Assembly: GCA_964035545.1 (NCBI GenBank)
Contig: OZ037767.1
Span: forward strand, 3,860,707 to 3,924,706
Direction: 5' to 3'
Length of the DNA stretch: 64,000 nucleotides
Source of the DNA: Bugula neritina
Taxonomy: Eukaryota > Animalia > Bryozoa
How positions within the stretch are numbered: the first letter of the stretch is position 1; each line of letters begins with the position of its first letter. This document shows, in pieces, positions 14,050 through 63,457 of this stretch. The notes below the pieces were generated by a model. It did no database searches and had not been told where the DNA came from. It was given only the letters and a program-made list of their open reading frames with translations. Made by a program: the position numbers and the translations under genes.

Positions 14050-15800
14050 TACCGCATTGATTATGCATGCAAAAACGTGTAGATTGCTATTCAATTTTAT
14101 CTTTAATAATTGGATCAATATCATAATGATAATAATTAATAAATGTAATCACTTAATTTTATTCATCGATAACTGATAGTGATATGAGTGAGACTGAGAG
14201 TGACTGTGAGTGACACTGACAGTCGTACTGACAGACTTAGTTACTCAGTTGGACTTACTCTTAGAGCTAGTTACACAAAGGTAGTCACTGTCACAGACTC
14301 ACAGCCAATGTCATACCAGAGTATGATTATGATAGTCATAGTCGGACTGATAGTGATGCACACTCTGACTCTCAGTCTCAGTCGTGAGGCAGTTTTCCAA
14401 CTTATACTCACCAAACTTTTAGTTTATGCAGTAATTTCAACGGCATTATGAAGTAATTATGACTATATTTCTAAATTTGTGGTGTTGTTGACAGATTACC
14501 GAATTGATTAATGTAAAAACTCTAATGATTTAGATCACGATAACATTTGCCCTATAGCCTACAGGACATCAGAGAGTGATTAGATTAGACGTTAGTTTGC
14601 TTCATTGATTTCTTCGTGCATAGATTTTATTTCGTGGAAAGATTTCGATATCATTGTAAGAGAATCATCGCCCATCTAATAGTCGTAAACTGCCACCATC
14701 TACGATTCTTTAAAAAGTGCTAATAATGTAACCCTTATTTCAAGTCTGGTGGAAATATAATAAGAATATTTATTATGATTATCATTGAGTAGAACACGAC
14801 ACAACATAGAGTGGAAGGTTCACGGGCCATGCCTTATTTTGCCATTTCTCATTCTAGTAGCACGCCTTGTGCTTGCGTGTAGAGGAACCACTTTAGCGAC
14901 ATCGGCGGGTATTGTTGATGTTGCAGAGATTTGTTTTATTTTGAGGCTCACACGGCATTACGATTATGAGTTGATTTTCTGTAGTTCATCTTTATACGTG
15001 ATATTATTAATGATTTTGCTCGTAAATATGGATAAAATGGTTAAAATTTCAATTTGTATTTTCATTTTGATTTTGTCAAGTGTCAGTGAATGACTATGAG
15101 TGCTACTCATAGTCATAGTGATTATCATAATGATAACCATTATGATTATGATTATAAAAGACAATCATTATGACATTACATTGGCTAATTACTGATATTG
15201 ATAATATTGAAAATCATAATGATATTTATATTTTATAGTTATTCACTTTCGTCTTTCAGCAAAATAACTTTCAATTAAATTTAAAATTTAATTTTATAAT
15301 TTAAAATTGAATTATTATATTTAATTTCAAATTCAATATCAACATGAAATCAGAAATGAAATATTTAATTTTATATTAGATTAAATTTAATATTGATAAT
15401 AGTAAAATTACAAGTATTTAGTATTTACTATTACTAGTACTAGTAGTACTAGTAGTAGTAGGAATAATAGTAATGTTATAGTAATACTAACTATTAGACT
15501 TGGTGACAGTCTCATTAATCGTAATTATATTGGTAACCATGATTATAATAAATAATCATACTGATAACATAAATTTAAAATTAAATTTTATAAATGATAA
15601 GAGACTAGACTATAGCCATAAGCGACTTCAACTGCAATTTGTAGTCACGACGATAATTGATGTATTTATCACTACTTAAGTGGCTAATTATTTGATTATT
15701 TATTTTTTTATCTAACTAACTTACTGAACAGCAGGTGTAGTATAACATTGGCTATGTTATAAACTTGTATGTTTGGTTCTTTCATTTCTGTGTTCCGTTC
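14050..15800. promoter_or_regulatory. Putative bidirectional promoter / 5' UTR region between the GPATCH2-like gene (-) and FTSJ1 (+)
   Basis: Divergent ATGs at 13981 and 15838; locally CpG-richer core at ~14600-14960 flanked by low-complexity tracts. Confidence 0.5.
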
Positions 15801-15837
15801 ATTTTAAGGTCATTCCTGAGACTGGTACTGATACAGC

Positions 15838-18800
15838 ATGGGCCGTTCATCCAAAGACAAACGTGATGTCTATTATCGACTAGCAAAAGAGGAAGGGTGG
15901 CGGGCTAGAAGTGCTTTTAAACTAATGCAGATTGATGAAGAATTCAAGTTGTTACAAAAAGGTAACAAATTAGATAATTTCTGCTTATTCTAGCTATTTT
16001 TGAGGTATCAATATTTTACAATTGCATGTTGTTTTAAGTATTTCACTTTCTTGTAGTTGATTGCATTGCGCTTTTTTCTAACAAAGACCATTCAGTCTAA
16101 TGTTTACATGCTCTGACTGTTAGGTGTCTCCAAGGTGGTGGATTTGTGTGCTGCCCCTGGCAGCTGGAGCCAATATCTGGCGAGAAAGTTGAGGTAAGTT
16201 GGAGTTATATCTCTATCACTGATGATTGTTAACAATATTTATTAGTTGAAAAAAAATTCATTCATCTGTTGTATAATGCTGTAATTTGTTAAAAATAAAC
16301 CATGTTGGTGATTGAAGGATAACTATGAATTCAGCTGGAAATCATATTGATATAATTACCATAATAGTTAACATGAAATATCTACAAAATAGTCAAATTG
16401 TAATAGTAACTACAATCTAAAGGAAGACTCTATCTTATGAATTAGTAAATTTGTAAGTGACTACAAGAATTGATCCTCTATACATAAAATTAGTGTACAT
16501 TTAATAGACCCTTTTCAGTGGTCTCCAATGTCCCCCTAAAATTAAGAGTTGTGTCCTCCCAACATGCAAAAATGTTGCCTAAAATATGCTTGAACGCATT
16601 TTTGTGGTTTCCGTTGCTGGGCAATGCAGAAATGGCAACTATGATTAAGTCTCAATTATCATTTGTTGTCCTGTCTGTTATGGCCATGCAATTTATAGCT
16701 GAATTGACCTTTCAACTCTGCAGTGGTCCAGTTTCACTGCTAGTTACACGTAATTACTGACATGCCTGCTCAGCAGCTTAGCTGTGTTATAGCATGTACA
16801 CATAATTATACTTTGAAGAGTTTGTACTACATTATGTTCAAAGGACCGCCAATGCTTTACATAGTTTCATGTTATAGCCAAAACTTTTTTAAAAGAAAAA
16901 TATTACTAAGAGAAGCAAAGCTCAGTTTAAGCAAAAATTTATTTAACATATTTTATATAGTTGATTGATTTATTGCATATCACAGGCATAACAACATGTT
17001 GCGAAATTCAGTGTGAATACTGGCTATAATATAAGTAGGCATGAACAAAAATGAAAGAAAAAAAAGTCAAAACTCTGTAGGAATATTTAAAATAGAAGCT
17101 CATTTAAAGTATTTACAAGAGGCAGACATCTTTTAATTCAATATCATCTTGAAATATTTTGTCTGCCCTACATCTTTATTGCATGTTTTACAACAGGTCT
17201 AATAGTTTTATTTGAAAGTTCTAATTGATCGATATGTTATACTTGGGGTGAACTTATCCTCGATTATGCATAACATTTGGTGACCCAGGATCAGCCAAGC
17301 CAGCTGTAAAACTACAGCTAAGTTTCAATAAGACTAGCTGATGTAGATATTTAGAGCATGAGAAGTTGAGAAGCTATAACATTAAATGGTTTCACTGAAA
17401 ACCCAAGCAAAAAGTTAATAACTGAATATTTTCAACATTCTTTCACTGCTTCCTTTATCAGAATTTGCTTTATACTTTTCAACCAAAAATTCTTTCAGAA
17501 GCGGTTTTCAGATAATTCAGTTTACCTATGTTGCAATTTGATGAGTTGGGAAACTTGGGTTTTCAGGTTCAGTAGTGGCTGGCTTAGGTTGGCCTTTTAC
17601 CTATTTCATTATATAACTATGTTTTAACCTACCGCCTACATTAACTAGGACCTTGAGTCTACTGCAGCTGACAGAGATGACTACTACACATGGGTAGGTG
17701 CAGTAATGGAGAAATTGAAAAAAGCCTTTGTTCTAGATTAGAAATGTAGCAAAAGAAGTTATGTTATGTGCAACACCAAAATTTATAAAGAAATTCAAAA
17801 AACTTAGGCTATCTCAATTTCTTTACTACTGTTCCTATACTACAAGCCACAGGCATAATATTAAGAAATAACAAAACTGTAACACAAAAACCTGAATGCC
17901 AACAGCTAAAAGGCTATCAGGGGTTTATCTAGATATATTTATTTGAGCACAATTGTTGCAAGTGCAATAGATGCATTTAATCTGCTAGAAAATTAAACGA
18001 CATGTATTAATCCACATTTCATATTCGTTTGATGATACAAATTTAACCCGTCTATTTAATAATATATCGTTTATCTATAGTTTTGTGAGAATGCTTCTTG
18101 AAAATGATGGGTATTGAGGTAGGTAGTTTAGCTATTCTCATAACGTAAGTGCATAAGTATATAATTAATTGAAAATGCTAACAGCTAATCTGCTGTCTCA
18201 TTCACTAGCAGAGCTCTAAGACTGTGCTAACAGCAGATTCTGACCAAAAAGTTGAAAGGTCAACAGCTATGAATTGAACATGACAGCCAGTATAACAAAT
18301 AATTAATGAGACTTGTATCATAGTTACCACTTCAACTTGCTCAGTAACCAAAACCACAAACATGCTTTGAAGTTTATTTTTCTCAAGATTTGTCAAGAAA
18401 GAAAATTTTTAAAAATTTTCTGGAACTGCTATTATGTATGCTTAGGCCAAAATATTTATCTCAGAAAAGAAAAAACTCATGCTAGCAATAGTCCTCACAC
18501 AAACCTTAAATTTCTCCTGATTTTATGACTTTCTATATATCATATAGACTCCCCCATATACCGGGTGGGAGGAGACAACTTCAAATTATAAAAGCCCCTA
18601 GAGGGACATTTGAAAAGGGTCGGGTCTATTAACCCATGAATAGTGTTTACAGGTTTAAAATTTCTTTTCCAATTGTTTACAATAACTTCCAGCCGGTCAT
18701 TTGGCCACCACACTGTGTAACAATAGAGTTGCCCAATTCTTTCATTCCAAAGTAAAATAATCTTCATAATAACAATAACAAAAAACATTTATAAGAATTA

Positions 18801-21800
18801 GAATACATGTGTTTACAGCTGTGTTTTCATGAAGTTGCATTGAGGTGAAATCATAATATTTAACCAGCTAACCAGCTTAGATTATTCTCTTTTAGTTACT
18901 TTTATTCTATGAGGGCTAGGTTCATTCTAGACCTTCAGTAAGCAAGTCTTGATACACCCTTAAATTCTTATTCATGTTAATTGCAATCCTGTAAAGGGGA
19001 AAGGGGTATGCTGTATTTATAATATTTTAAACTTATTAATGCCAATTCATGTTGCCATTTTGTAGAGATTCTTGTTGAACTTTTTACATTCTATTAGAAT
19101 AATACTTAAGGTTTTACTCCTCTTTCTTAATTACTTTGCAGCTTTATGGTGGTGATTAGACTAATTAATTCTAATGCATCAGTGAAAAACTCATTTATAA
19201 TCTGGGAGGGCAGTTACATCATGGATTTGTTCTAATTTTTTTACCTTTTAGCCTTTTGTTGTCTCTTTTTTCCAAAACATACAAATGTTGAGAAACATGC
19301 TTGCTTTTTGTGTGAAATGAGCATTGCATTTGTGGAAATGTTTCCTTTCCTCCAGCATAAGCTCATTGGCGATGTTGACATATTACTATTAGTGTTTGCA
19401 TTATGTGCAGAGCCGCTGAGTCAGGGAGTGATGTAAAGATAGTGGCAGTGGATCTGCAAGCTATGGCTCCTATAGATGGAGTGATGCAGCTACAGGGTGA
19501 CATAACAAAGGTTAGTCACTTTATTCAGTATTTCTACTGAGTTATATAGTTCCCCCAGTTGCTGTTATCTTTGTTGTATTTTCCTCAGCCAATCTCTGTA
19601 CCTGTTACTAAAGTTTCTCATTAACCTAGGCTTTGGCTGGTTGAGTATCTCCAAGAGAATTTAATACATGTATGCTTAGATGTAAAGTGTGTAGCCAAAA
19701 TTTATTTTTATATTATAACCTATCAGTAGTAACTTCTCACCACTTGTTCATTGAATAATTCCTGTATATACAATTCTCTGTATGCTGTGTTTAGGAGTCT
19801 ACAGCCACTGAAATAGTTTCTCATTTCTCCGGAGACCAAGCTGATATTGTAGTGTGTGATGGAGCACCAGATGGTATGTGCATAGTTTCACATTTGTTTA
19901 ATATTAGTATCACTGGCTTTACATGGATCGATCTCATATTGATCTCGCCGAGAAAAACGATCGATCGGAGAATTGTGCTCAGATCGATGTGGCGTCTTTC
20001 CATGGTCTTATTGCCTTGAGATCAATCTTAGTTCGATCTCCACAAACCGACCAGCTCAGATCGATGAAGATCGATCTTTGACATTTTTCCATGGATCGAT
20101 CTTGCTGAGTGTATGTTGTTTTGTCATTCACATGTCTTCATTGAAAAGTTAAAAATATTGCTTTTAGAGCTGCTGCTTGACATTAAATAGATGTGCTTTT
20201 AAAGATTTAAAAATGTAAACTGATAATAGTTTCACATCAGTGAAGGAGTTTGTGTAATGTTAGTATATTGCTTTCTTATTTACAGATCTGCCTTGAAAAG
20301 TTACAAATTTTTCCTCTAAAGCACTGTTTTGACGTCATATGGATGTGCTTTTACAAGTTTTAGAAATGTGAACTGTGTTAGAATTTTTGTATCTTTTAAA
20401 ATTTGGTATGGATACTTGTTTGACTAAATTGCATGCAGGAGTATTTAAGTCACTCAACTAGTTGCCTAGTGAGGCTATTGGGGTGAAAGATGACTTTTAT
20501 TTTGAAGTTATACTAATGGTTAATTGCTGACTGTTGTAGTAACTGGACTACACGACATGGATGAGTACATTCAGGCCCAGTTAGTTCTTGCAGTAAGTTA
20601 TATCTCTGATCTCCATGCCGTAGGACTGCGAATTCACTTTATTTCTTTCAACATTTGATTTTAACTGAACACTAACTATAGTTATTGATGACTAGAAATT
20701 ATTTGTAGTGTATTGTTGTGTTGCTGTGACATACTGGTGAAATCATAACAGGCAGTAAAATTATAACTCTGAAATTATAAAGTCTATAATTATTCCCGAA
20801 GTTATAACTTGGGCTGTTCTAGTTTTGAAATCACCTTTAAAATATACAATGAGGAGCTGTGAATTTTTATCATCATTATCATTATGATTCTGACTAGAAA
20901 CGGTATTAAACCAAGTGTTATCTTCAACGAACTGTTTCAGATTTGATTATGTTTGCCAGACAACATGTTGTAAACTCTTAGAGTGATCTCTTCACATACT
21001 TTACTGACAGACTCATTGTATCGGTTTGTGTTAGTGTCTGGTTGAATGATTTACTTTAACTACTAGCCAACTTGGCAACAGGTTTTCAAGTTTGTTTACT
21101 CTCAAATCGTACCCTAGAAAAATGGGAAAAAATAGAAATTGTATAAGTAAGTAGTAACAATATAAATCAAAAGTCAGAGAAACATCATGAACATCACAGA
21201 ACCAAACAAATTGACATGATCTATTATAATTCTAATAAAATTTACAATATTGATGCATAGATAAACTTCTTAGCCATCACAATGCCAAAACCGATAGTCT
21301 ATTCTCACAAAGAGTGTAAATATTGGAGTCTGTGTGCTCGTATAATGCTAAAGATGCTCCTCTCTGGCTGTTTTGATCATGACACACTGACTCATGCAGT
21401 ACAGTGAATTAGCACTAGCCCTGCCAGCTAATAATAGCTTTGGTGAAAGCATTAAAGCCTGAAAGCTTTAATGATTGGCTGCCTGCCAATACATCTGGGT
21501 GGCATACCAATACACTCATCATGAAATGTTTCCCCTTCTATGATATGTTCTATTCTACAGGCTCTGAATATCACTACTCACGTTTTGAGACATGGTGGAA
21601 ACTTTGTCTGTAAGGTAAGCTGTGTGCATTCTATACTAATCCCACTGTATTGGTATTGTAAACAAGGTACATTGTTGTTGTCAACACATTTAACTGCTTT
21701 AAAGTGTAAATATTTTTATGTTTGCCTCACATATTATGTAACAGGAGCCAAACTAGCTTGTGTAATGGGACACACAGACTACAGTTGAAACTGAACTAAA

Positions 21801-24800
21801 CTGAACCCGAGAAAAAAAAAACCATAGACCGCTGCGGTCAAAAATAAGACAGTTGTGATATCGGAAACTCGAAAACTCGCTCACAGTTGAGTATCAACTG
21901 TAGTCTGAATGGGGCATTATATTCAACAGAGGGGTTTCTGGCGGTGCGTCTTTATATCACAGGAAGTTGAATCTTGTTTGTAATGTTTATTCTAAGTTTA
22001 GGTGTTTCGTGGTAAGGACATCACGCTGCTCTACTCTCAACTGAAGATATTCTTTAAGGAGGTTGTTGTAAGCAAACCGAGAAGCAGCAGGAATTCCAGT
22101 GTAGGTCAGTAGACAAACCTTTCTTGAAGTTGTCTTTCCAACTTGGTGGTGTGATTGTTTCAGATAATAATCTATTTTGTGAGGACAATGTACTATTCTA
22201 TTGTGTGCATTGACATTTCTTAAATCATTTTACACAAAGAAGTAGCTTGAAATTCTTTGTTAGATTTGTTCACTAGGTATTTGAACTGTGTTAATTAGAA
22301 ATAATTATTAATGTTTCTTGCTTTGTAAACAATTAAAATGGATTTAATTTGAAAAATATATCCTTTTCTAGCACTAAACCTCCCTTAAATCTTCTAGCTC
22401 CAATTGATTTCTGTCACACTGTGCAATAATTTTAATGTAAAAATTTTATTTTACCGACAACTGGCAAATTGTGTTCATAACTTTACAGATGATCACTGTA
22501 GCCAATAAGAATACAATTTGTTATACTGACTGGTATTGTGCTAGCTGTAACTGAGCTTAACCTATGAAATTTCTTTTCACATGCTGATTTGCATTCCAAC
22601 TAAAGTAATCAAATATTTAATCATTGCAGAAGCTTTTGTTGTCTGCCTGGAATATTCTCCCCCTGAAGGATACACTCCCAACATGTCTAACCCACTGCTT
22701 GATCATCATTATGGTATGCATCCCCCCCTTTGCTTCCTACATGCTGTAGCATATGCTGTTGTCTTTGAACCTGTATACTCCTCAATTTCATTTGATTCAA
22801 CTATATCTCAAGTCTATTAAAACTAGCAAAAGTCAAATAAAAGTGAAATGATGTAAATATTGTCATCAAAGGCTTTTACCTATGTAGGTATAGCATAGTA
22901 ATGATTTTGTTCTTATTTTAACTGTACTTGCTTTCATTTGTTTGCTCATTTTATGATTCAAGTTGTACTGCATATTTTGGTTTCATGTCACGTATAGATT
23001 TAGACTTCAACCAGCTGGAAGGAATCAACAGAGTGGTAGTACCTTTTATTGCTTGTGGTGATCTCAGTGCCTATGATTCAGACAAGACTTATGGCCTTCA
23101 GGTATTGAATATCCAATTCAATACTATATGTTAATATGATTACCTGTATCTAGATCTAAACAAGCAATATATCTAGTTAATTAGCTTTAACTCTTACATT
23201 ATCGGGTTTTCCCACCTTTTGAGTTTATTTCAGTAAATCAGCCAATTTTGTCACCCTGAGTGAATGTTGCTGTTAATCACTGTTGAAAGCTTTCTTCAAT
23301 TTGAAATTTCACCTATCTACACAAATCCTAGCCAGGAATCTATTGATGCTAAAATTAGTTTGATTTAAATAGAACCTTTTTTTTCACAGCTCCTTTTTTA
23401 GACTGTGTTAGAGGAATCACCTAATATGGCTGTTAAATGAGGTCCCCATCCAAATTCAAGGCGATAAAATCAAACTCACTTCAATTGTTCTCCTAGCTCT
23501 AGACCAGGGGTGTCCAACCTTTTCAAACCGAGGGCCACAGAAATGAAATATTTCATGGTGAGGGCCACATTGTAAGCTTCAGCTTGTGCTGGGGGCCATA
23601 GCATCAGTATTTTTCAAACTACTTTATTCCAAAACTTAATGAATCATTACACAATTAAGTCTCAATAGTTAGTGCCAGCTGCATTTTTTGTGTTATTTGT
23701 ATAAATAAGGCATTTAAAAGGTGGCTTTTCACTTTAATTCATCTGAACAGTGGCCGGTGGGGAGGGGGAGGAGTCGATACAACTCGGCCCGATCTCCTCT
23801 ACATTCATATTACATCCTAAAACAGATAGGAGAGGCCGTTTCCTTTAAATATGAAACAAAATACAAATGTTTTGCCCTTGTTGATTATCCATATCTTGAT
23901 ATTTTGAAATTGTTAAAATCAAACTACACAATGCTAGTGTAGAAGCATACAAAAACTCTTATGAGTTAATATGTCAAAGTGAAAAAAAGATGATCATTGC
24001 TCTTTCGTGTGCCAAATTTATACTTTGCAGCAACCATAAGAAATTCTTTGCATTAGTTAGCTGTTTTTATGATCTTATTTTTTTGCAGGGTTCTTTTAAG
24101 GTATTTAGGTTTTTTTGGCCAAGTCCCTAGGAGGTCTTTTCTGGAGTAGCACATTTTGGTACTCACCCAGAAGATTTAAATTTAAAATGTGTATTCTGTG
24201 TAAAAAATGACACAGAAATTGTACACTACTTCACTTTCTTGACCACTGAAGTTGCTTCTAAGAGCATAGGAAAGCTATGAAAAAGTTGTTCCTTCTTTTA
24301 CAATTTGATATCAAAATTTCAGTCTCACAACATTTATCAACATTTTCATTTTGTTGTACATATATGCAGTGAGTTTTTCTGCAATGTTTATGTTTCAAAA
24401 GTCTATAATGTTCATTATCCACAAACCTTTGTAGCCCTTCTACCATTTCCCTGGGCTGTTTCTTTTAAATATGAAACAGAATACAAATGTTTTGCCCTCT
24501 TTGATTATCCATATTTCGACATTTTAAAATTGTTAAAATCAAAATATGCAATGCTAGTGTAGAAGCGCACAAAAAATCTTCTCATGAGTCAATTTGAACT
24601 ACACACAACAGTGTTTTTACAAAAGTGGATTACAGAATAAAACATGAGTATAAATGACAGATGACACACAGTATTATAAAAAAGCATAAAAACGCAACTT
24701 TAGCTTACACTACCACCAGCCGAGGCAGCTCACCAGGTCAAGGACGATCTCTTTGCACGATCATGCAATGGAGATAAATTATTTATTGATCCGTCTACTA

Positions 24801-49937: not shown

Positions 49938-52900
49938 ATGGCGTCCACAACCTCATCTGACAAGTATCTTGTCCAGTTTCATGAGTTTACAGAAGACAGT
50001 GACCTGCACGGGATTAAACAGCTGACTCGGGTTCAAAATGGTTGGGTGAGTTTGCGTGGTGTTATATTCTGCTTTGACCTCTACTTCTTTATCATGAGCC
50101 AAATGCTATTTTCCTATTTATATTTTAATAATATTTAGGCAGGTCTCTTTTCATTACTTCTTAAAACTGTTTTTCCAAGTTCAGTTTCTGGGTCCAGTAG
50201 GGTGTTGAGGTAGCAGTTTTAACTAAAATAGAACTGATGTTAGGTAAATCTTCAACACTGCTCCTAAGCTACACTTAGGGGCTTCTAAGCTAAGTTGGGA
50301 ATAAAAGCTTATAGTCTTAAAAAGCTTCAGTTCTTACAGTGGTTGAGGGTTTTCAAAGAGGTAGTTGATACAAGGGATCAAGGATAAGAGAAGATTTTGA
50401 GTTGACTGAGGCTTTGCCTGCTTAAACGTATATTATTTACATTATGTTTTTATTCTAGATTGATATTATCTTATTTTACCTGCTGTAGGTATAGCAATAA
50501 ATCAGCTCCACATTGCTCAACATTGTTAGTGACTTGAGTTAACTTATTCAACAAGAATGCTGCGTCCATTTACAAAGTAGAACTGTATTCTTCCAGTAAA
50601 TAATTATTCAATTTTATAGCAAGTTTATTGATATAAGGTGATTACTTGCTATATGCAAATTAATCCAATTAACTTGGAGTTTAACCTGTTACAAGTTGAA
50701 GCAGTTTTACTGATTTTAATTATCCTTTTACATCTACAATTGTTCATAGGTTGAATTTTGAAAGCTATGGATACTGTAACTGTTAATAGTTTCACACATT
50801 TCACTCTGCTTACTTGCAGGGTACTTTGATCTCAAAGTGTAGTCAAATGCAGTATGAAAAAAGTTTAGAAAAAAAGCCATATGTTTCAGCTGACAAATTT
50901 TGCAACTGCTGTGTTATTTAGCTATTTTTAACCTGCTCCTTCAACTAAAATTTATAGACGAATAAAGGAACATGAACTTGAATTAGAAATCTCTACTGAA
51001 TTATTGTGCCCAAATGTCAAAGTTAAGAAATGTAGAAACTGACAAATATTTTTTAATTTTTCAACAATCTAGAAATGCTGCTCTAGTGTAGTATCCTATA
51101 GCTTTTACATAAGTTTTGCATGAATTCTTACACCCTGCCATTGTAAAAACCTTAAACAATTGCCTAGATATTATGAAAATGTAATATAGCAACATTCTTC
51201 AAATGTTGACATTTCTGACATCCATAACCAAAGTTCACAAGTGAATATTTTTGCTAATTGCTAAGAATTTCTGCATTTAGTGAGTGACCTGAGAATAAAA
51301 GTTTGACTTTTAAAATCTAGTTATTCTTCCGTAGAGTTCTATAACATGTGGCAAATTTAATCATTCTCTAAACACTTATAATTATTTAAATACTTGGTGA
51401 AGCACTTAGAAATCGATGTGCTGCCAAGGTATTATAACTATGATGCATATTGCGTCTTTTATTATGTGTGTTATGCACATATAACGTTGCTATTATTCAA
51501 TACTATATGCATGTAAATAAGTTTGAAAAGCAATAGTCTGAAAGCATAAAACTATACAAGACTTGATGTCTACTGTCTTACTTTTAAATGTTGAAATAAT
51601 TTATTTCTCTTCAGAGACCAGGTTGGACTTGACAAGAATTATTTGCCAGAGGTTTTTGCAGAATTCTGTTAGTCCATGACTTGATACGTTTGATGAGTCT
51701 AAAGTTGCAAACTGTGGCATATTTCAATTAGATAACTTCATCTTATAAGAGTGATTGACAGGGTTATTCATGAATCTAGATGAACATTTGCTAATAGGGA
51801 TACTCAACAGTTTACAAGTTGTGTGCTCAATCCTCCTTATTATTAAACTGAGAAATTTTAAAACCTGCAGCTAAATTTGCGCTAAGCAAAATGCGATAGT
51901 ATAGCGTTCATTTCTTATATGTTTATAGTTTAGTTCTGAAGAGCTATTTTATATACATATCCATATATCACAAAAAATATATCCTGGTGTATAAAAGTTT
52001 CTTCCCTGAAGAAATTAAATGATTATCTTAACAAGAAATTATGTGTTAGTTTCAACTAAAGATCAGTAACGAAGCATATTTTGTTAAATTCGACTCACTA
52101 CTTAATCTGTTTAACTGCACAGGTTAGCAAAACATCATGAAATATTTTATAAATAAATCTAATGCAATTAAGAAAATTGCTTTTGCTCTATAGAAAGTGA
52201 ATTTGCCTTTCTTTTTCCAGGTCACCATATTTAACATTAAATTTTAATTAAAATTCAAAAGCTTTTTAAAATAATATTGTCACATAATTTAGTGAGTTGT
52301 TGAACAGTTGGTGAGGTCATTTATTTCTCATTTTCTAATGCATTTCTTTCAAACACATGCTTTTCAACATTTGCGTTTCAAGGGCGGTAAATAGATTTAG
52401 AACTTAACTTTTCATTAGTTTAAAAGTAGTTTCTGTGTTTGGTTAAGTCAAAGAACTTTTATAATAATGAGAAACCAATTAATTGGCTGCATAAAAGCCT
52501 CGTTTAGCTCTAGTAAGCCATAAGGATTCTCTATATCCTATAATAACATATTTTAATCAAGAAAAGTTTCTTCTTTAACTAACCATCTATTTTTAAGCTT
52601 GTTAAAATAAATAATAAATCAAATTCTATACAAATTATATTATCTAATAGTTTCTATAGCTATTGACACCTTAAAATCTTAGTGCATCATTCACGTACAT
52701 CTAGCATTTAAACTCTAAATGTTTGTGATTATGTTTATGATTTTTTATGTTTGTATCTTTTAATTGACCACACAGGTTTGGCATTAAGGAATTTTGAGTG
52801 GTATGCTTAATGAAACACAATCTCTGCTGTTTGCTGAATGCCTGAATAAAATCTTATTAATTGGTTTTACTAACATTATTATTAAAATAAACTGTCAGTT

Positions 52901-55900
52901 TAAATAACTTAACCCGTTACAAATTCTGGTATACTTGAAATGTGGTTTTTCTGGTATGTTCTATTCATGATATGCTATTGTGTTACTAGACTCTAGAATA
53001 GTCTTTTTTTCTACAATATTAGCAGCATTTACACCATTCTGAGTCACAAGTGGGTAAAGATAGTTGAAGAAGAACATTGTTTGTACTATAGAAATCAAAA
53101 AGCATTGTTGGCAAATATAAGCTTTGATTGCAAACTCTAATAACTCTAATAAGTGTATCATATCATCTTAGTCTTTATAATAAATATAGTATACTTTGAA
53201 ACACAACAACCTTTTCCATTTTCTACTGCTTGTAAACTAATGCAGTGCTTGTATCTATTTGACTAAACTTTTCTAAATCTTGACAGGGATAGTTCAGTGA
53301 GAGCTATAGCCATTTTGTGATGCAATCCATCTTTAAATACTTTTCTACCATTATTCAACATCTAATTTCTTTTGCATAGAATTTCTCTCATAATTTTATT
53401 CAAACATTTACTGGCACACTAAAATTTGGACATATAAAAATACATTCTTTGAAATGTTAAATATATAAAATTATATTATTTATTTTAGCTTATGGCGTAG
53501 TTTATAAGCACATAATATATCAGGCTGCATGCTTCTGTTACAGTTTAGAAGAGTGGTTTGGGGTGCAATGGTGTTCAGTTCTCTTGGAGTTCTCATCTAT
53601 ACAACAATCAACCAAATCGTATATTTCTTTAATTATGAACATTCTACCAAATATGACATCAATTTCGTGCACCAGCTAGGTAGGTAAAGCTGTAAAGCTG
53701 TAAAATATCGTAATATTTTTATTCTATTTATTACTTTTGTATATAAACATGTGTAATTTTCCTTGAACTTTTTAGTCAATAAAAGTTAGAGTATTTTTAT
53801 GTTTATGGATATATATGCTACTTTGACATTTCCATCATGTAGTTGCCAATTGTACTGTCTAGCTTTGGTAAAAAAAGATTAACTAGGCGAGGTAAAACTA
53901 TACATTTCATTTATCAAATAATTTTGTAAAAACAAAATTCTAGTTTCATGAATTCTTATTTTTTTGAAAATAATATTTTAATTTGCGAAATAAAAATTTT
54001 ATTTTATGACAATAAACAAATTTTTCAGTTGAAAGGAACAAAAGTAATTCTCACTGTAGATTTTCCAGCCATTACAATATGCAATGCTAACAAGCATAGA
54101 CGAAGTTCCTTAACCTTTAAGGATATAGTAATTATGGGACCTCATCTTGGCCTCACCGACTATAATATGACCTTACAACACCCTGAGCTCTATCCTCCTG
54201 ACTGGTACAATGAGACTTTTCTCCAGACGAACTGGACAGAGATCAAGCCGCTGTACAATGGTTGGTAACTTGTGTCTTTGTGTATGTGAGTGTCGCTATG
54301 GAGTTATCTTCTCAATCACAGTACTTCTTCCGTATCTCACTAAGCTGCAGCTTCTAAAACTTTGGTTTGTAGCGTAGTAGAATACCATTTTTAACTCCCG
54401 GATCTATAAAATTCGGCCATTTTATTCCCATACACACATAAAAAACTACAAAACAGGATCCAAGTCCTTCTCTTGACCTATTGAATTTCGTGAGAAATAG
54501 AACTCTGAGATATAGATGAAGTTCCTAAGCTTGCAACATTATGCAGTGTGGGTCTGTAGCAATTATGTCTATAGCATTTCTAGCCCGTGGCAGAGGATAA
54601 CTGCTGTAAAACACCAATTTTGAATAGACATCTGGTTTTATAGAGGATGATTTTGACATGACCGAGTTCTTCAATAGAACTGGCCACCAGTACAAGGACC
54701 TGGTACAGCACTGCAGCTGGAAGGGACACAAATGTGACAGGAGCTCGTGGAGTGTGGACTACACTCACTACGGCAAGTGCTACACCTTCAACAAGAACGG
54801 GGACCACCTCCTTATAAAGGCTGGAGCAGGTGCGTTCAACTTCAACTTCCTAAATACCTATCTCATGGTATGATAGAATTATAATATAGAAGAAATGGCC
54901 ACAAACCTTCAAATATTTTTTGTTTTATTCAACAAAAATGAAGCAGTGCTGTTACTTATAACTATTGCATATTTCAAACTTTCTAATTTCTGTTTACTTG
55001 CTTATAGGTTATTGTAATCCCTAACAAGTTATATTGTCACCTGATTAATTTTATAATATGCAGTACATATATATATATTTATAATAATTAAAACTCTGCT
55101 TAAATGTATAATAATAATGCCATTCAAAGGAGTAAATAAAATTATAGTGATCTATACATATGCTAGCACGTAAGACATGCGGACAAATAGATGAATATAC
55201 ACAGTATTATATTGTATCTTCAAGGTAATGGGCTGCATCTTGTGCTGTTTGACGAGGAACACGAATATCTAGAAACACTGGAATCTGATGACCTTGGGGT
55301 CAAGTTCTTGCCACACGCTTACATTGAACCTCCTTTTCTAAAAGAGCTAGGGTTTGGCTTAGCGCCAGGTTTTCACTACTTGATTGCATTGAAGGAGAAA
55401 TCTGTAAGTTTGTATTATAATGAAGTTTGATATATTTCAAGGCTGTAAATACCAGCTGCGTTTACAAAAATCTTGTTGTGTATAAATTTTGCAAAGCTAC
55501 TTTAAATAGAGCTATAATTAATGCTAATAGTTTTTATTTGAATGACCCTATAATTTGACCTATAAGAAAACAGACATAATTGTATTAGTGCTCAAACAAA
55601 AATACTGTAGTATTTCAACTGTTGTTTTTATTGCATTACTTTGAAGAGTTCATAGGTCAAAGGCCACAAGTCATATACAAAACATTTGGAATAATACTTT
55701 AAGGATCTTTTGAGTTTAGCTAGACACTGCAAAGTTTGAACTCAAATTTTACTTCTAATTTAATTTTAGTCTAATTTTTACATTTACAATATTTTACCCT
55801 CAATCAATTTTAAAAACAATCTAATTGTCACTTGCATATGGTTAAACTTAGCAGAGTTTAGTAGCATTCTACATAGGTTGAGTATGTCTAACATAGTATT

Positions 55901-58808
55901 AAGCTGAGTGCAACTGCCACCAGGTCATTGCCTTGCCTCTTCCTTACGGAGACTGTGAAACTGACCATCCCACAAAATTCTTTCCCAACTACACCGTTCC
56001 TGGATGTCGGATTGAATGTGAGACTGAAAAGATTTACGATCAATGTGGCTGCCGATTGGTGGAGAGCCCGGGGTATTACCCCATATGCACTCCAACTCAG
56101 TTTGATTGTGCGACAGCAATGCTAGGTAGCTGGCACCACGATTTTTTGTCCTTTAGTTATGGGTGAGCAGAATTATACAGGAAGTGGTAAATTTATTGCA
56201 GCTCATTTAAATTTGTGTTTTCAATATTTTATCTAATTGTGAGTTACGCTAAAATTTTATTATCTAAATTAATTTAGGTGAGCTGCTGCCGTTAAGTGTT
56301 TAATAACAGACAGACAGATGTATAAATCTGCTCACGTGTAACTAGCTTGTTTCATTTCACTGACTTTGGAGCTTTAATAGTTGTTGAATATACTGTAGAT
56401 GATAATGCTACCACATCCACACGGTAACTGTATACTAGATCATAAGACCCGCTACTTCAACAACTATACCGTGTCGGCCTGTAGGATTGAATGTGAAACT
56501 GAAAAAATATTTGCAAACTGTAACTGTCGGTTGGTAGAAAGTCCCGGTGACCACCCGACTTGTATACCAAGTCAGTTCCAGTGTGCCTTGCAAGTGTTAG
56601 GTACATCAATGTAGCTCTTTATTTTGGTTTAGTCCAGCTGTGCTTGCAGAAAGTCTTCGCTTGACACTTTCTACGTGTTGTGAACACGATGAGCATGCAT
56701 GCAGCCCGTCAGCTATATTGTAACATAATGCTTTTAAATGTTGCGTTGGTATATAAAATTGCATATTATAGTCATGGGATATATATATATATATATATAT
56801 ATATGCGCCTACCAGTCTTATGCAAGTCTAATTTATATTTGTGCTTGTCTGCTGCTATAAACTCATTTTAAATCTTACGTACTATCATTTGAATTTTGCA
56901 CTTTCATTATACCTGCTCTGTGGATTATATTTTAACCTATTATTTTATAAGGTTATGTGTTCATAAAAATACTTGGTAAACTTCATACATGAAACAATTG
57001 TTTTAACCTACACTGACTTTTGGTTTTAGCTAAGTATGTTTTTATGAAAGGAGGTTTATTGAGACATAGCTAGGGGCCAATGATACATTTATTTAAAAAT
57101 TTTCTACATCTTTATATAAAATAATAAAATAAAGTTTAATTAAATTAAAAATATAACCCTACAAGTAGTATATTTATTGTACTAAATGTATATATTTACA
57201 GAACAGATTGAGAAATCTGATGAGTGTGTTTGTGAGAACCCCTGTAACGCCACCCAATACCCATATACAATGTCAAAACTTAGGCTAAGAGAGTCAACAG
57301 TAGATAAACTAAAGAAAGAGCACCCAATCCCACCAGAGTTAAACAGGTACTGCAATATCTGGACTGCAATATCTGGTGGTATTGAATGACTTAACAATAC
57401 AAGACTGAAAATTTTCAGGCAAAGAAAAATAATTCTTGAACATTGAAGGTTTTGCTTCTAGGCTTTGTTTCACTGCATTTGTCAACAGTTTATTAAATTT
57501 GTGTTCACATAAGATTATTTATTCACCTGGTGGTGATAAAACAAGCTTTCGTGATTCAAATGATAAATATGAGAGGTAGGTGCAGTAATGGAGAAATTGA
57601 GAATAAGCCTGTGTTCTAGATTAGAAATGTAGCAAAATAAGTTATGTTCTCTCAAGAATTTCAACCTGCCCCCGAAACAAAATTTATTAACAATATTGAA
57701 AAGCTTACGCTATTAAAATTTTTCCTTTACTTCACCTAAATTGTTATTAAGGTGTATGAGCTGAAGTCTATTAGTATAATATTATTTTTAATATTTTACT
57801 GTAATTAGGTTTTTCGAAACTAAAGACAACTTCTTTACACAGCTGTAGCAACAAACCACTCATCTGTCAACAAAATTAAAACTTTATTGAGTTTGTGATG
57901 CATTTTTTAAAACTACGTTGTTTGTTCTAGAGACAACATTATTGTGCTCAACCTCTACTTTGATACTTTGTCGTATGAATACATCAAGCAGGTTCCAGCA
58001 TACAGCTTCTCATCTATACTGAGTATGTACCTCTACAGTTTGTTTAATAGTTATTGATGTGTACGTGAGAAATAGATCGATGTGTTATTTTAGGGCCGTC
58101 TGACGTTTGTGTAAAATAATCTTTTTATTTGAGTTCAATTTGTCTGAAGTAATATTATACTATTTAATATTGTAGTTCATGTTTGGTCTTCAGTTTTATA
58201 ATAGTATAGTGATACAAGCTGTATTTCCTGTGCCTGTTTAGTGGATAGAACTTCATTAATATTAATTAGTTACACCTACTAACTCCATACTATAGTTGAA
58301 CAAAATAGCTTACTATATTTAAAATTTTAACAAATCAGCCATCTTTCATTGAGGGCTTAAGCCAGGTACAAGTAGCTTTATAAGTTGATACGTCATTTTT
58401 TCAAAGTTCTTCATTGTAGCACAACAGAAATAAGTAATTAGCTTTTGTTTTTATTTTCTGAGATTTGTTAGAATATTGCAAGTAACATGGCAAATGTGAG
58501 AGATTGAAATCCAGTACTAGAAAATCAGCAAAGCAGTCACAGTAGAGTATGCAGTTATGAAAATTGAAACTGATTTAAACATGACCGTGGTGTTCATTTA
58601 TTGCATCAAATTATTATCTTGTTTTATTCTGTCAGGTGATTTTGGTGGAAATATGGGACTGTGGCTCGGAGCTAGCGCTTTGGCAGCGTTCCAGCTGATT
58701 GATTACCTGGCAGTGGCTTGTTATATGAGGTGCTGCCAGTGTGCTAGAAAGGTCAAACCGACAGACAACAAGGTCATGGCTTGGGAAACTGAGAAAGAGA
58801 AATATTAA
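49938..58808 (+). CDS. ASIC-like DEG/ENaC sodium channel subunit with alternative exons 6a/6b
   Basis: Exons 49938-50045 (..DLHGIKQL, pre-TM1 HG motif), 53544-53679 (RRVVW..TM1..YEHSTKYD), 54060-54260 (FPAITICN), 54644-54829 (YGKCYTFN..AGA), 55225-55403 (GNGL..EPPFLKELGFGLAPGF), 55924-56125 or 56399-56600 (CRIECET..CxCRLV), 57202-57346 (CVCENPCN), 57931-58022 (LNLYFDTLSYE..QVPAY) and 58637-58808 (SDFGGNMGLWLGAS, TM2). Confidence 0.95.
55924..56125 (+). CDS. Alternative thumb-domain exon 6a (202 nt, phase 0 to 1)
   Basis: caccag|VIALPLPYGDCETDHPTKFFPNYTVPGCRIECETEKIYDQCGCRLVESPGYYPICTPTQFDCATAML|gtagct. Confidence 0.9.
56154..56344 (+). promoter_or_regulatory. Predicted intronic pre-mRNA stem-loop between exons 6a and 6b (putative splicing-control structure)
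   Basis: 56154-56179 pairs with 56319-56344 (24/26 pairs, 2 G-U); nested 56198-56213 pairs with 56271-56286 (16/16 pairs, 2 G-U). Confidence 0.7.
56399..56600 (+). CDS. Alternative thumb-domain exon 6b (202 nt, phase 0 to 1)
   Basis: ctgtag|MIMLPHPHGNCILDHKTRYFNNYTVSACRIECETEKIFANCNCRLVESPGDHPTCIPSQFQCALQVL|gtacat. Confidence 0.9.
57573..57650 (+). mobile_element. Copy of the GAGGTAGGTGCAGTAATGGAGA TIR-like interspersed repeat
   Basis: Matches 17692-17765 over ~75 bp. Confidence 0.7.
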
Positions 58809-59406: not shown

Positions 59407-61494
<2,088 letters not shown>

Positions 61495-62895
61495 AATATC
61501 TTCCCTCGAGTTGACTAAATTTAATGTATAGACAGAGGGTTCTATTCCTATCAGCATTAGCGTGCAAGCATCATGCTGTTAACACGCGACAAAACGCGTA
61601 AAATACAGCATTACCAAAACGACCAATCAGCTTGGTCCCACCTAATGCTGCAACTAAATATAATTCTAGATTCGCTGTAAGTTATTTCACAGTTTTTATT
61701 CGAATAACAGAAGCAATTCAAGAATTATATGCTCCTTTCAAGACATAGACACTATTGTTTGCTTTACAAAACTATAAAGTATTCAACATAACAATTATAT
61801 CATTGTAAGCCAAAAAAGACAACATGAATTGTAACCCAGAGTATAGCACAATCACGTGACAGACAGAGTACCTGCAGCTCTTGTCATGGTTATATTTAAC
61901 AAAAGCCAAGCTTGAAGCTATTTGATGCCAAATTTTTAGTGGTCCTCTTGATAATAACTAACATTGAACTGCATGTGGATTATCTGGCATTGCTTAAGTT
62001 TGTATATACTCACTTGTGAAATGTGCTGCTTACAGTACATTTCTGTAAAATGCTTGTCTCCAGCAAAGTTTAAACCACAGACCTTCAACTTCAAAGCTAG
62101 CATATACTATTCATTACACTATATGGGTGCTACTACAGAATCTCAACACCATGCACATTCTATATACTCAGTTCTCCAAAACTCTACCATATGGCTCTGT
62201 CAGTTCTTGGGTTCCACTGGCCCCTCAAATTCTTAGGAGTAGTACTTTACATTCCTCAGGCCAGAAAATAACTTCCCCACTTGAAACCAAACCTTAGATT
62301 TCTACTTGCAAGCGCAATATGGGGGCCATGCACAAGAAAATTTCATCACTATGATAAAGAAGAAAACAGTGGTATAATTGGTATTTTATTGCCAAACACT
62401 TGGTTAAACATAGTAGGAATCCATGTTATTTTGAAATAATCAATCACTATATTAAGTAAAAGAACATGCTTTGTTAGTTGCATCTGAAAAATTTGTAAAA
62501 AAAATTCTAAGCCTAATACACCAAAAAAGTTAATTGAAATATATATTATGTTAATAGTACTGAAAATGACGTTTTTACTTATAAACGATGATTATCTTTG
62601 TGAATTGCATGTGAATAAATTTATTATCGATAAGATATACTACTTACTATTGAGTTCTAAGAAGTTTACATAACACTTGCACCTATCAAGCTGCCTGAAA
62701 CTAGCCACTAAATAAGAAAAGTGAGATAAATTACCAACAACGAGCACAAGTATTTACATGTAAAAGACAAATACTCTTCAAGGAGTTACTATCCCTTGCC
62801 TTATGTATCTGACGATATGCCAAATGTGCAACAAGGAAGCACTGGACACACGTCATATTACAGGCATACGAAATAATTATGTACCTATTGGATTA

Positions 62896-63058
62896 GAATA
62901 GTTTTATAAGCAGCTCGGAGTTGAGAGTGATTAAGTGCAGTAATTTGCAGTTCTCAAGTTTGAAATCGGGGGTCTATTAAAGTCCCCAACTGAAACTTGA
63001 GAACTGCAAATTACTGCACTCAATCACTCCGAACTACGAGCTGCTTATAAAACTATTC
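62896..63058. mobile_element. Fold-back element with ~66-bp inverted arms (non-autonomous DNA element)
   Basis: gaatagttttataagcagctcg..gtgcagtaatttgcagttctcaagttt is inverted to aaacttgagaactgcaaattactgcac..cgagctgcttataaaactattc, with about 4 mismatches. Confidence 0.8.
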
Positions 63059-63457
63059 ATGGGATTAATTGTAATCGATTCCATATGTTACGCTTGACTT
63101 ACTGTTATCATTGAAAGCAAACTGCTTCTGCATTACCTACTACTACTTCAACTACTACTAATTTGAATGGTGAGTGTATTAATTTCAATGTCTGTAAACC
63201 TGTATTATTAACCATTCTATAAGTAGTTTGTAGGAGTAACGGATGGAGGGGAAAAACGGTCATATAAGGGTACAAAATGCCGGTCAAATTGTGAGAGAAT
63301 TTATTGACTGAGAGTTGTGATTTTTTTCTTAAATAAAAAGGCAATGACATAATTATTCAGCCATTGATGATTGTAGTTTCAGCACTTGCGGAGCATACAT
63401 GTTGAAGAGGCGAGTCAAAAACTGTTTTTACCTACTTTTTGTAAATTTGTAAATAAT

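What the first reader, a model, noticed from the sequence alone, without database searches (positions are those of the whole stretch)
56126..56398. Long RNA stem-loop fills the 6a-6b intron: candidate steric mechanism for exclusivity
Seen: an outer stem (56154-56179 with 56319-56344; 22 Watson-Crick, 2 G-U, 2 mismatches) and a nested stem (56198-56213 with 56271-56286; 14 Watson-Crick, 2 G-U). All four wobbles are G-U on the sense RNA and would be A-C mismatches on the antisense. Folding loops out ~190 of 273 nt. That leaves 28 nt from the 6a donor to the stem and ~19-33 nt to candidate branch points (CACTGAC, A56363; CTTTAAT, A56377), an effective distance of ~47-61 nt. Known: a donor-to-branch-point distance below roughly 50 nt blocks joining of adjacent exons, and structure-assisted steric hindrance is described for insect Dscam exon 17. 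Inference: the same logic evolved independently in this channel gene.
Basis: partly seen in the sequence, partly recalled or inferred. Interest (0 to 1): 0.85.

Follow-up and report, generated by a model that had tools for sequence, protein, structure and literature searches.

The report
Folded intron between swappable channel exons
In a moss animal (bryozoan), the intron between two interchangeable exons of an ion-channel gene folds into a long hairpin that probably helps stop both exons being used together; two unrelated genes of the same animal show the same layout, but nothing yet proves the function.

Summary
The stems are real, exactly as described. The outer helix (-36 kcal/mol) beats 1000 shuffles and its arms are single-copy. 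The gene is an ASIC-like DEG/ENaC channel of Bugula neritina with two intact 202-nt thumb exons. The steric reading is plausible but unproven. Folding leaves an 82-nt intron and 38-61 nt between donor and branch point. That is borderline: it fits yeast zipper stems, which help splicing, and a paralogue has an 85-nt intron. NMD alone would remove joined 6a-6b. What raises the case is recurrence. Of five other Bugula duplicate-exon pairs, two have very short introns (27, 58 nt). Two (LanCL, katanin; in-frame exons, so no NMD backup) carry a single-copy closing stem at the same place (+24/+25; 67-76 nt left). Only 3 of 43 ordinary introns do. The fifth, an independent thumb duplication in a paralogue, has no stem. 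The scan's unchecked notes report similar stems at five other loci of this genome.

The parts
49938..58808 (+). ASIC-like DEG/ENaC channel gene, 9 coding exons with a duplicated exon 6; 473 aa with either copy (model from exon homology, no RNA)
   Evidence: PF00858 on exons; ASIC1/2 best PDB matches; exon phases and total length (exon 8 ends at 58022 and the stop codon at 58808 on re-reading)
55225..55403 (+). Exon 5, ends in phase 0
55924..56125 (+). Exon 6a, thumb domain, 202 nt, phase 0 to 1, weak donor GTAGCT
56120..56135 (+).
56126..56398 (+). 6a-6b intron, 273 nt, single copy in the genome
56154..56179 (+). Outer (closing) stem, 5' arm; holds a cryptic donor at 56163 that matches U1 better than the real 6a donor
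56198..56213 (+). Inner stem, 5' arm
56271..56286 (+). Inner stem, 3' arm; holds a second strong cryptic donor at 56278, directly after an AG
56319..56344 (+). Outer (closing) stem, 3' arm; contains a branch-point-like CTCAC
56345..56371 (+). Element with candidate branch point A56363; predicted to extend the stem by pairing with the 3' end of 6a (56090-56117, -19.7) or with the homologous stretch of 6b (-18.8); shuffle p about 0.006, post hoc
56377..56388 (+). Candidate branch point A56377 and the region before the acceptor; perfect 12-bp complement of 6b 56456-56467; shuffle p about 0.004, post hoc
56399..56600 (+). Exon 6b, thumb domain, 202 nt, 61% amino-acid and 62% nucleotide identity to 6a, weak donor GTACAT
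57202..57346 (+). Exon 7, starts in phase 1

Best explanation
The stem-loop is a selected RNA element that folds away the middle of the intron between two mutually exclusive exons. Shown: the fold in silico, its uniqueness and its position. Inferred: it forms co-transcriptionally, complete 19-33 nt before the branch point leaves the polymerase. It leaves just enough single strand for U1 at the 6a donor (28 nt) and for U2 and the acceptor at 6b (54 nt), so each site can work with its outside partner (6a to 7, 5 to 6b). It holds donor and branch point about 40-60 nt apart beside a bulky helix, which lowers spliceosome assembly across 6a-6b. Exon-intron pairings over the branch region and burial of two cryptic donors probably add to this. 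NMD clears any joined product that escapes. The same device appears to have arisen separately in LanCL and katanin of the same animal.
For: Stem beyond chance and single-copy. Donor-branch path with U1 and U2 sites held open: 38 or 52 here, 37 in LanCL, 45-49 in katanin, against 102 in the stem-less paralogue pair; the steric limit quoted for vertebrates is about 50 nt (PMC7969005, PMC5740500). Closing stems start at +29, +24, +25 and end 54, 53, 43 nt before the acceptor, in three unrelated sequences. LanCL and katanin arms are not multi-copy. Those two exon pairs are 141/141 and 159/159 nt, so NMD cannot police them. Two more pairs have 27- and 58-nt introns, so spacing-based exclusion is probably used in this species. 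3 of 4 inter-duplicate introns of 200-280 nt against 3 of 43 ordinary introns: Fisher p 0.005, or 0.03 without the focal case (criteria set post hoc). Residual lengths of 67-82 nt are below all 89 ordinary Bugula introns sampled (shortest 85).
Against: Spacing lies inside the 42-85-nt window judged compatible with the yeast A complex, where such stems can favour splicing (PMC12350175). Related species have 70-79-nt introns between the orthologous coding exons. The frame is incompatible, so the stem is not needed here. The second thumb duplication has a 277-nt intron and no stem. One ordinary intron has an inverted repeat at +25/-55, partly a dispersed repeat. The rank test without the focal case is not significant (p 0.11). 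Real splice sites are not less accessible than controls. No orthologue with both exons among about 20 related loci, so no covariation. No RNA data. Branch points are predicted only.
Confidence: 0.45

Rival explanations
1. The stem is a tolerated relic: a foldback or MITE-like insertion, or an inverted duplication, that landed in the only free part of an ordinary short (about 80-nt) intron and has since decayed. Exclusivity comes from NMD and protein regulators acting on the two weak donors.
For: An insertion between the donor zone and the branch zone would give the same +25/-50 layout without selection on the stem. A control intron has a partly repeat-derived inverted repeat with that geometry. 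The arms start and end in TA. About 1.4% of GC-matched genomic windows hold helices this strong. Antisense folds as well relative to its shuffles. Joined and skipped products both carry premature stops. NMD serves 14 of 29 C. elegans clusters (PMC4165533).
Against: No second copy of either arm or of the intron in 216 Mb (the DNA search skips very common words, but the 17-mer pattern search does not). Loops between the helices are not complementary. All transition mismatches inside the closing helices of the three genes are G-U. Enrichment in inter-duplicate introns, including in-frame pairs.
Confidence: 0.25
2. The stem works by masking, not by spacing. It buries two cryptic donors that are stronger than the real ones, and it places the branch-point element beside the 3' end of 6a. 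Competing exon-intron pairings (element with 6a or with 6b; branch region with 6b) then decide which exon is exposed.
For: Cryptic donors at 56163 and 56278 pair with U1 at -9.3 and -9.5 against -6.1 for the real donor and cost 16 and 12 kcal/mol to open. The 12-bp perfect intron-6b helix (p about 0.004) and the dual pairing of 56345-56371 (p about 0.006). Donor hairpin.
Against: The extra pairings were found post hoc and add only z about -2 (11/240 shuffles) and -1.4 (synonymous recoding). Real sites are no more buried than control sites. The LanCL stem-loop holds no GTRAG donor and katanin has none besides its real one. GTGAG is simply the complement of CTCAC, so the cryptic donors may be a by-product of the arms.
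Confidence: 0.18
3. It is a zipper stem that helps 6a-6b splicing and so feeds transcripts to NMD as a way to tune channel level.
For: The geometry meets the published zipper-stem definition when A56377 is the branch point: 28 + 33 = 61 nt (PMC12350175). The joined product is an NMD target.
Against: The same stem layout in LanCL and katanin would promote in-frame double inclusion inside catalytic domains, which is unlikely to be useful.
Confidence: 0.06
4. The duplex is a binding platform for double-stranded RNA proteins (ZFR/ILF2-type DZF proteins, ADAR) that enforce or regulate the choice.
For: DZF proteins bind intronic dsRNA and control fidelity of mutually exclusive splicing in human cells (bioRxiv 10.1101/2022.06.15.495552). 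The stem offers about 40 bp of duplex.
Against: No direct evidence here. It does not explain the fixed distances to donor and acceptor. Editing could not be checked without reads.
Confidence: 0.06

Closest known systems
Steric-interference MXE pairs (alpha-tropomyosin exons 2/3, OGDH 4a/4b; about 9% of human clusters per PMC5740500)
   Same: Tandem homologous exons, donor and branch point apparently too close for joint assembly.
   Different: There the closeness is linear (short intron or distant branch point 25-46 nt from the donor with an AG-free zone). Here the linear distance is 237-251 nt, AGs are scattered through the intron, and closeness exists only if the RNA folds.
Yeast zipper stems (RPS17B type; PMC12350175)
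   Same: A stem that links the donor side to the branch-point side and leaves 42-85 nt single-stranded.
   Different: Described in ordinary introns and as helping splicing (with exceptions such as RPL28); here it sits between alternative exons and is proposed to hinder it.
Dscam exon 17.1/17.2 (Yue et al. 2013, not held; summarised in PMC7969005)
   Same: A two-exon cluster where steric limits and RNA structure are said to act together.
   Different: Summarised as structure plus distant branch points. From memory, its structures mask or approximate splice sites rather than collapse the intervening intron.
Docking site-selector competing pairings (Dscam 4/6/9, 14-3-3, Mhc, srp; PMC6071210, PMC4691838)
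   Same: One intronic element (56345-56371) can pair with homologous stretches of both exons.
   Different: Partners here are exonic, the pairing is weak and post hoc, and the dominant structure is a fixed hairpin with no competing arm.
NMD-policed MXE pairs (FGFR2 IIIb/IIIc; 14 C. elegans clusters, PMC4165533)
   Same: Exon length 3n+1; double inclusion and double skipping both give premature stops.
   Different: NMD does not need or explain the stem, and does not apply to the LanCL and katanin pairs.

Membership tests
Mutually exclusive exon pair | Two tandem homologous exons with same length, phase and open frame, both under constraint | tested here: met
   202 nt each, phase 0-1, all invariant Cys kept, 26 synonymous and 26 non-synonymous codon differences, no stop or indel
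Mutually exclusive exon pair | Junction reads 5-6a, 5-6b, 6a-7, 6b-7 and few or no 6a-6b reads | not testable with these tools
Steric-interference MXE | Linear donor-to-branch-point distance under about 50 nt | tested here: not met
   237-251 nt to the two candidates; no AG-exclusion zone
Steric-interference MXE | Effective distance below what this species' spliceosome accepts | tested here: inconclusive
   38-61 nt; residual intron 82 nt against 85 nt (shortest of 89 in Bugula) and 70-79 nt in relatives
Steric-interference MXE | Branch point mapped and joining restored by lengthening the spacing | not testable with these tools
   needs lariat mapping and minigenes
Zipper stem | Stem starts at least 10 nt from donor, ends at least 20 nt from branch point, total linker 42-85 nt | tested here: met
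   28 + 33 = 61 with A56377; with A56363 the 3' linker is 19, one short (PMC12350175)
Zipper stem | Promotes splicing of its own intron | not testable with these tools
   no functional data
MITE / foldback transposon | Multiple dispersed copies with shared terminal inverted repeats | tested here: not met
   only the two arms match the outer-arm 17-mer at 1 mismatch; three other exact inner-arm 16-mers share no flanks
MITE / foldback transposon | Target-site duplication | tested here: inconclusive
   arms begin and end in TA, which is also part of the inverted repeat
Docking site-selector system | One conserved docking element pairing alternatively with selectors of each exon | tested here: inconclusive
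   dual pairing p about 0.006 for 27 nt, 0.09 for the 15-nt core; no conservation data
Conserved functional RNA structure | Compensatory base changes in orthologues | not testable with these tools
   about 20 related loci all show a single exon 6, some on short contigs
Known intronic ncRNA (Rfam) | Match above a family's gathering score | tested here: not met
   no match in the intron even at E 10
NMD-policed MXE | Double inclusion shifts frame and gives a stop well upstream of the last junction | tested here: met
   stop at codon 77 of the joined pair, three junctions downstream

The most novel reading that the evidence does not exclude
Bugula neritina enforces mutually exclusive splicing in many genes by one design: keep the effective intron between duplicated exons at or below the spliceosome's working minimum, either by a very short intron or, in 200-350-nt introns, by a sequence-unrelated closing stem fixed about 25 nt after the donor and 45-55 nt before the acceptor. 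A zipper stem would then act as a block rather than a help.
Probability: 0.35. Interest if true: 0.8.

Novelty: new variant of a known kind. Interest (0 to 1): 0.62.

Why it matters
Most mutually exclusive exon pairs have no known enforcing mechanism: only about 9% of human clusters fit linear steric interference (PMC5740500), and screens measure linear distance only. If a folded intron can supply the short spacing, many pairs written off as too far apart need re-examination. The sign of a zipper stem (help or block) would then depend on a few nucleotides of linker, which is directly testable with small minigenes. I found no paper describing this closing-stem layout between exclusive exons, nor swappable thumb exons in a DEG/ENaC channel; the library searched lacks most subscription papers. 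If the stem is a relic, what remains is an ordinary NMD-policed exon pair.

Tried and rejected
Multi-copy MITE: rejected. Known ncRNA: rejected. Distant branch point with an AG-free zone: rejected from the sequence. Strong masking of the real splice sites: not supported against controls. A docking site downstream of 6b (56708-56720) pairing with either donor region: energies of -11 to -13 are within the background of the region. Orthologue search: one representative search, three homologue searches, six contig look-ups of exon-level hits and one metagenome scan gave only single-exon relatives; exact look-ups of window ORFs were blank. The exon tree was too short to order the duplication, though it separates the two duplicated genes cleanly. 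The primary Dscam exon 17 paper and the 2018 WIREs review were not held; one search fetched an unrelated paper through a wrong id.

Full report
Setting. The window is contig 3 of a 216.0-Mb genome whose contig sizes (35.64, 33.58, 32.42, 16.05 Mb) match Bugula neritina tzBugNeri2.1 (PMC11480708). The finding lies in a DEG/ENaC gene at 49938-58808. Its exons hit PF00858 and exon 6a matches the thumb of ASIC1/2 structures best. Exons 6a (55924-56125) and 6b (56399-56600) are both 202 nt, start in phase 0 and end in phase 1, and give a 473-aa frame with either copy. They differ at 26 synonymous and 26 non-synonymous codons with no stop or indel and keep every invariant cysteine, so both are probably functional. 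That they are spliced either-or is inferred, not shown. Joining both stops 10 codons into 6b, and skipping both also stops early (a local translation, not a search).

The observation. They form with probability 0.9-1.0 whatever flanking sequence is added. The outer helix is worth -36.1 kcal/mol; no shuffle of 1000 reaches it and 5 of 346 GC-matched genomic windows do. Whole-intron folding is less striking (z -2.3) and the antisense strand does as well against its own shuffles (z -3.2), so the G-U argument is weak. The intron has one copy in the genome, the outer arm matches only its partner, and three other exact hits of the inner arm share no flanks. Rfam has nothing.

In exon context the 6a donor sits in a 6-bp hairpin, 56345-56371 extends the outer stem by pairing with the end of 6a, and 56377-56388 pairs perfectly over 12 bp with 6b. 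The 27-nt element pairs about equally with the homologous stretch of 6b. Shuffle p-values are 0.004-0.006, but these were found post hoc and add little overall (z -2.0 and -1.4). The real donor and acceptor are no harder to open than constitutive controls. Two cryptic donors (56163, 56278) match U1 better than either real donor and are buried by 12-16 kcal/mol.

Is the spacing short enough? By the outer stem alone, 47 or 61 nt separate donor and branch point and 82 nt of intron remain. With U1 and U2 sites held open, the ensemble path is 38 or 52 steps. A56377 is the likelier branch point because A56363 has two AGs between it and the acceptor (sequence; inference from the scanning model). The vertebrate limit is quoted as about 50 nt (PMC7969005; PMC5740500). 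Yeast modelling accepts zipper stems with 42-85 nt of linker, and these can help splicing (PMC12350175). A Bugula paralogue has an 85-nt intron between exons 8 and 9, and related species have 70-79-nt introns in this family; none of 88 other Bugula introns was under 95 nt (approximate boundaries, one gene family). The geometric test is thus inconclusive.

Relatives. About 20 related loci from other species, and the two closest Bugula paralogues, show a single exon 6, though some contigs are short. The duplication looks lineage-restricted and covariation could not be tested. A distant paralogue at C3:17.20 Mb has its own, independent duplication of the same exon (202 and 205 nt) with a 277-nt intron and no strong stem. 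A stem is therefore not required for such a pair to persist when the frame is incompatible.

Recurrence. I took four other duplicate-exon pairs from the scan's notes, chosen from notes that do not mention a stem between the exons in their titles, and checked them myself. Pax has a 27-nt and RFX a 58-nt intervening intron. LanCL (208 nt) has an 18-bp helix of -31.2 kcal/mol from +24 to 53 nt before the acceptor (0/400 shuffles). Katanin (266 nt) has a multi-helix stem from +25 to 43 nt before the acceptor (whole-intron z -6.3). Their arms are not repeat families, their exons are 141/141 and 159/159 nt and so escape NMD, and their donor-branch paths are 37 and 45-49. Among 43 ordinary introns of 140-450 nt, 3 have such a closing stem (Fisher p 0.005; 0.03 without the focal case). 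By a strand-symmetric score two of the three top controls are tandem-repeat fills and one is a partly dispersed-repeat inverted repeat at +25/-55 that does not dominate its RNA fold. The rank test without the focal case gives p 0.11. Numbers are small and criteria post hoc. Five more unchecked notes describe stems between duplicated exons elsewhere in this genome; they are leads, not support.

Verdict. The most likely reading (0.45) is a selected closing stem that lowers 6a-6b joining by cramping donor and branch point, with masking and NMD as helpers. The main rival (0.25) is an old foldback insertion in a normal short intron, which predicts the same layout. Masking or competing pairings (0.18), a splicing-promoting zipper (0.06) and a dsRNA-protein platform (0.06) follow. 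It works like steric-interference splicing if true, but it is not a member of that class as defined by linear distance. The Dscam exon 17 precedent could not be read at first hand and appears to rest on a linear short spacing.

No contig that I took for human was saved or compared.

Noticed in passing
L007:1492-2175 (G000:C3:17201162-17201845): A second, distant DEG/ENaC gene has an independent tandem duplication of the same thumb exon (202 and 205 nt, 277-nt intron, no strong stem); its nearest paralogue at C3:29.85 Mb has one copy.
   Followed up: partly
window 56113-56115 and 56588-56590: At the position aligning with chicken ASIC1 Asp346 (acidic pocket; numbering inferred) 6a has Thr and 6b Leu, while most single-exon relatives have Glu. 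6a carries 9 acidic residues, 6b 6.
   Followed up: no
window 56273-56283: An AG directly followed by a strong donor, with a T-rich run upstream, looks like a recursive splice site; it is buried in the inner stem.
   Followed up: no
L075, LanCL intervening intron (G000:C1, about 11711882-11712089, minus strand): Closing 18-bp stem; a partial second copy of the 5' arm at about +9..+20 offers an alternative register close to the donor.
   Followed up: partly
L077:1530-1795 (katanin p60): Heavily structured intron (z -6.3) between in-frame duplicate AAA exons.
   Followed up: partly
L064 and L067 (Pax, RFX): Intervening introns of only 27 and 58 nt between duplicate DNA-binding exons.
   Followed up: partly
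L037:858-1205, L037:2301-2509, L028: Ordinary introns almost filled by TA repeats or palindromic minisatellites that would fold to leave 37-50 nt; if spliced, predicted folding alone does not block splicing.
   Followed up: partly
window 57577-57598 with 57717-57738: A 22-nt inverted repeat (helix -25.6 kcal/mol) in the middle of constitutive intron 7 of the same gene.
   Followed up: no
window about 62880-63060: Long near-perfect hairpin (37 bp, -62 kcal/mol), MITE-like.
   Followed up: no
window 59690-60130: About 440 nt of GT and GCGT microsatellite downstream of the channel gene.
   Followed up: no
window about 15800-23150, + strand: Exon-like reading frames resembling the tRNA 2'-O-methyltransferase FTSJ1/Trm7 (recognised from memory, not searched).
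   Followed up: no
L017 and L059: The thumb exon is split by an extra intron in amphioxus and, at another position, in one related contig.
   Followed up: no
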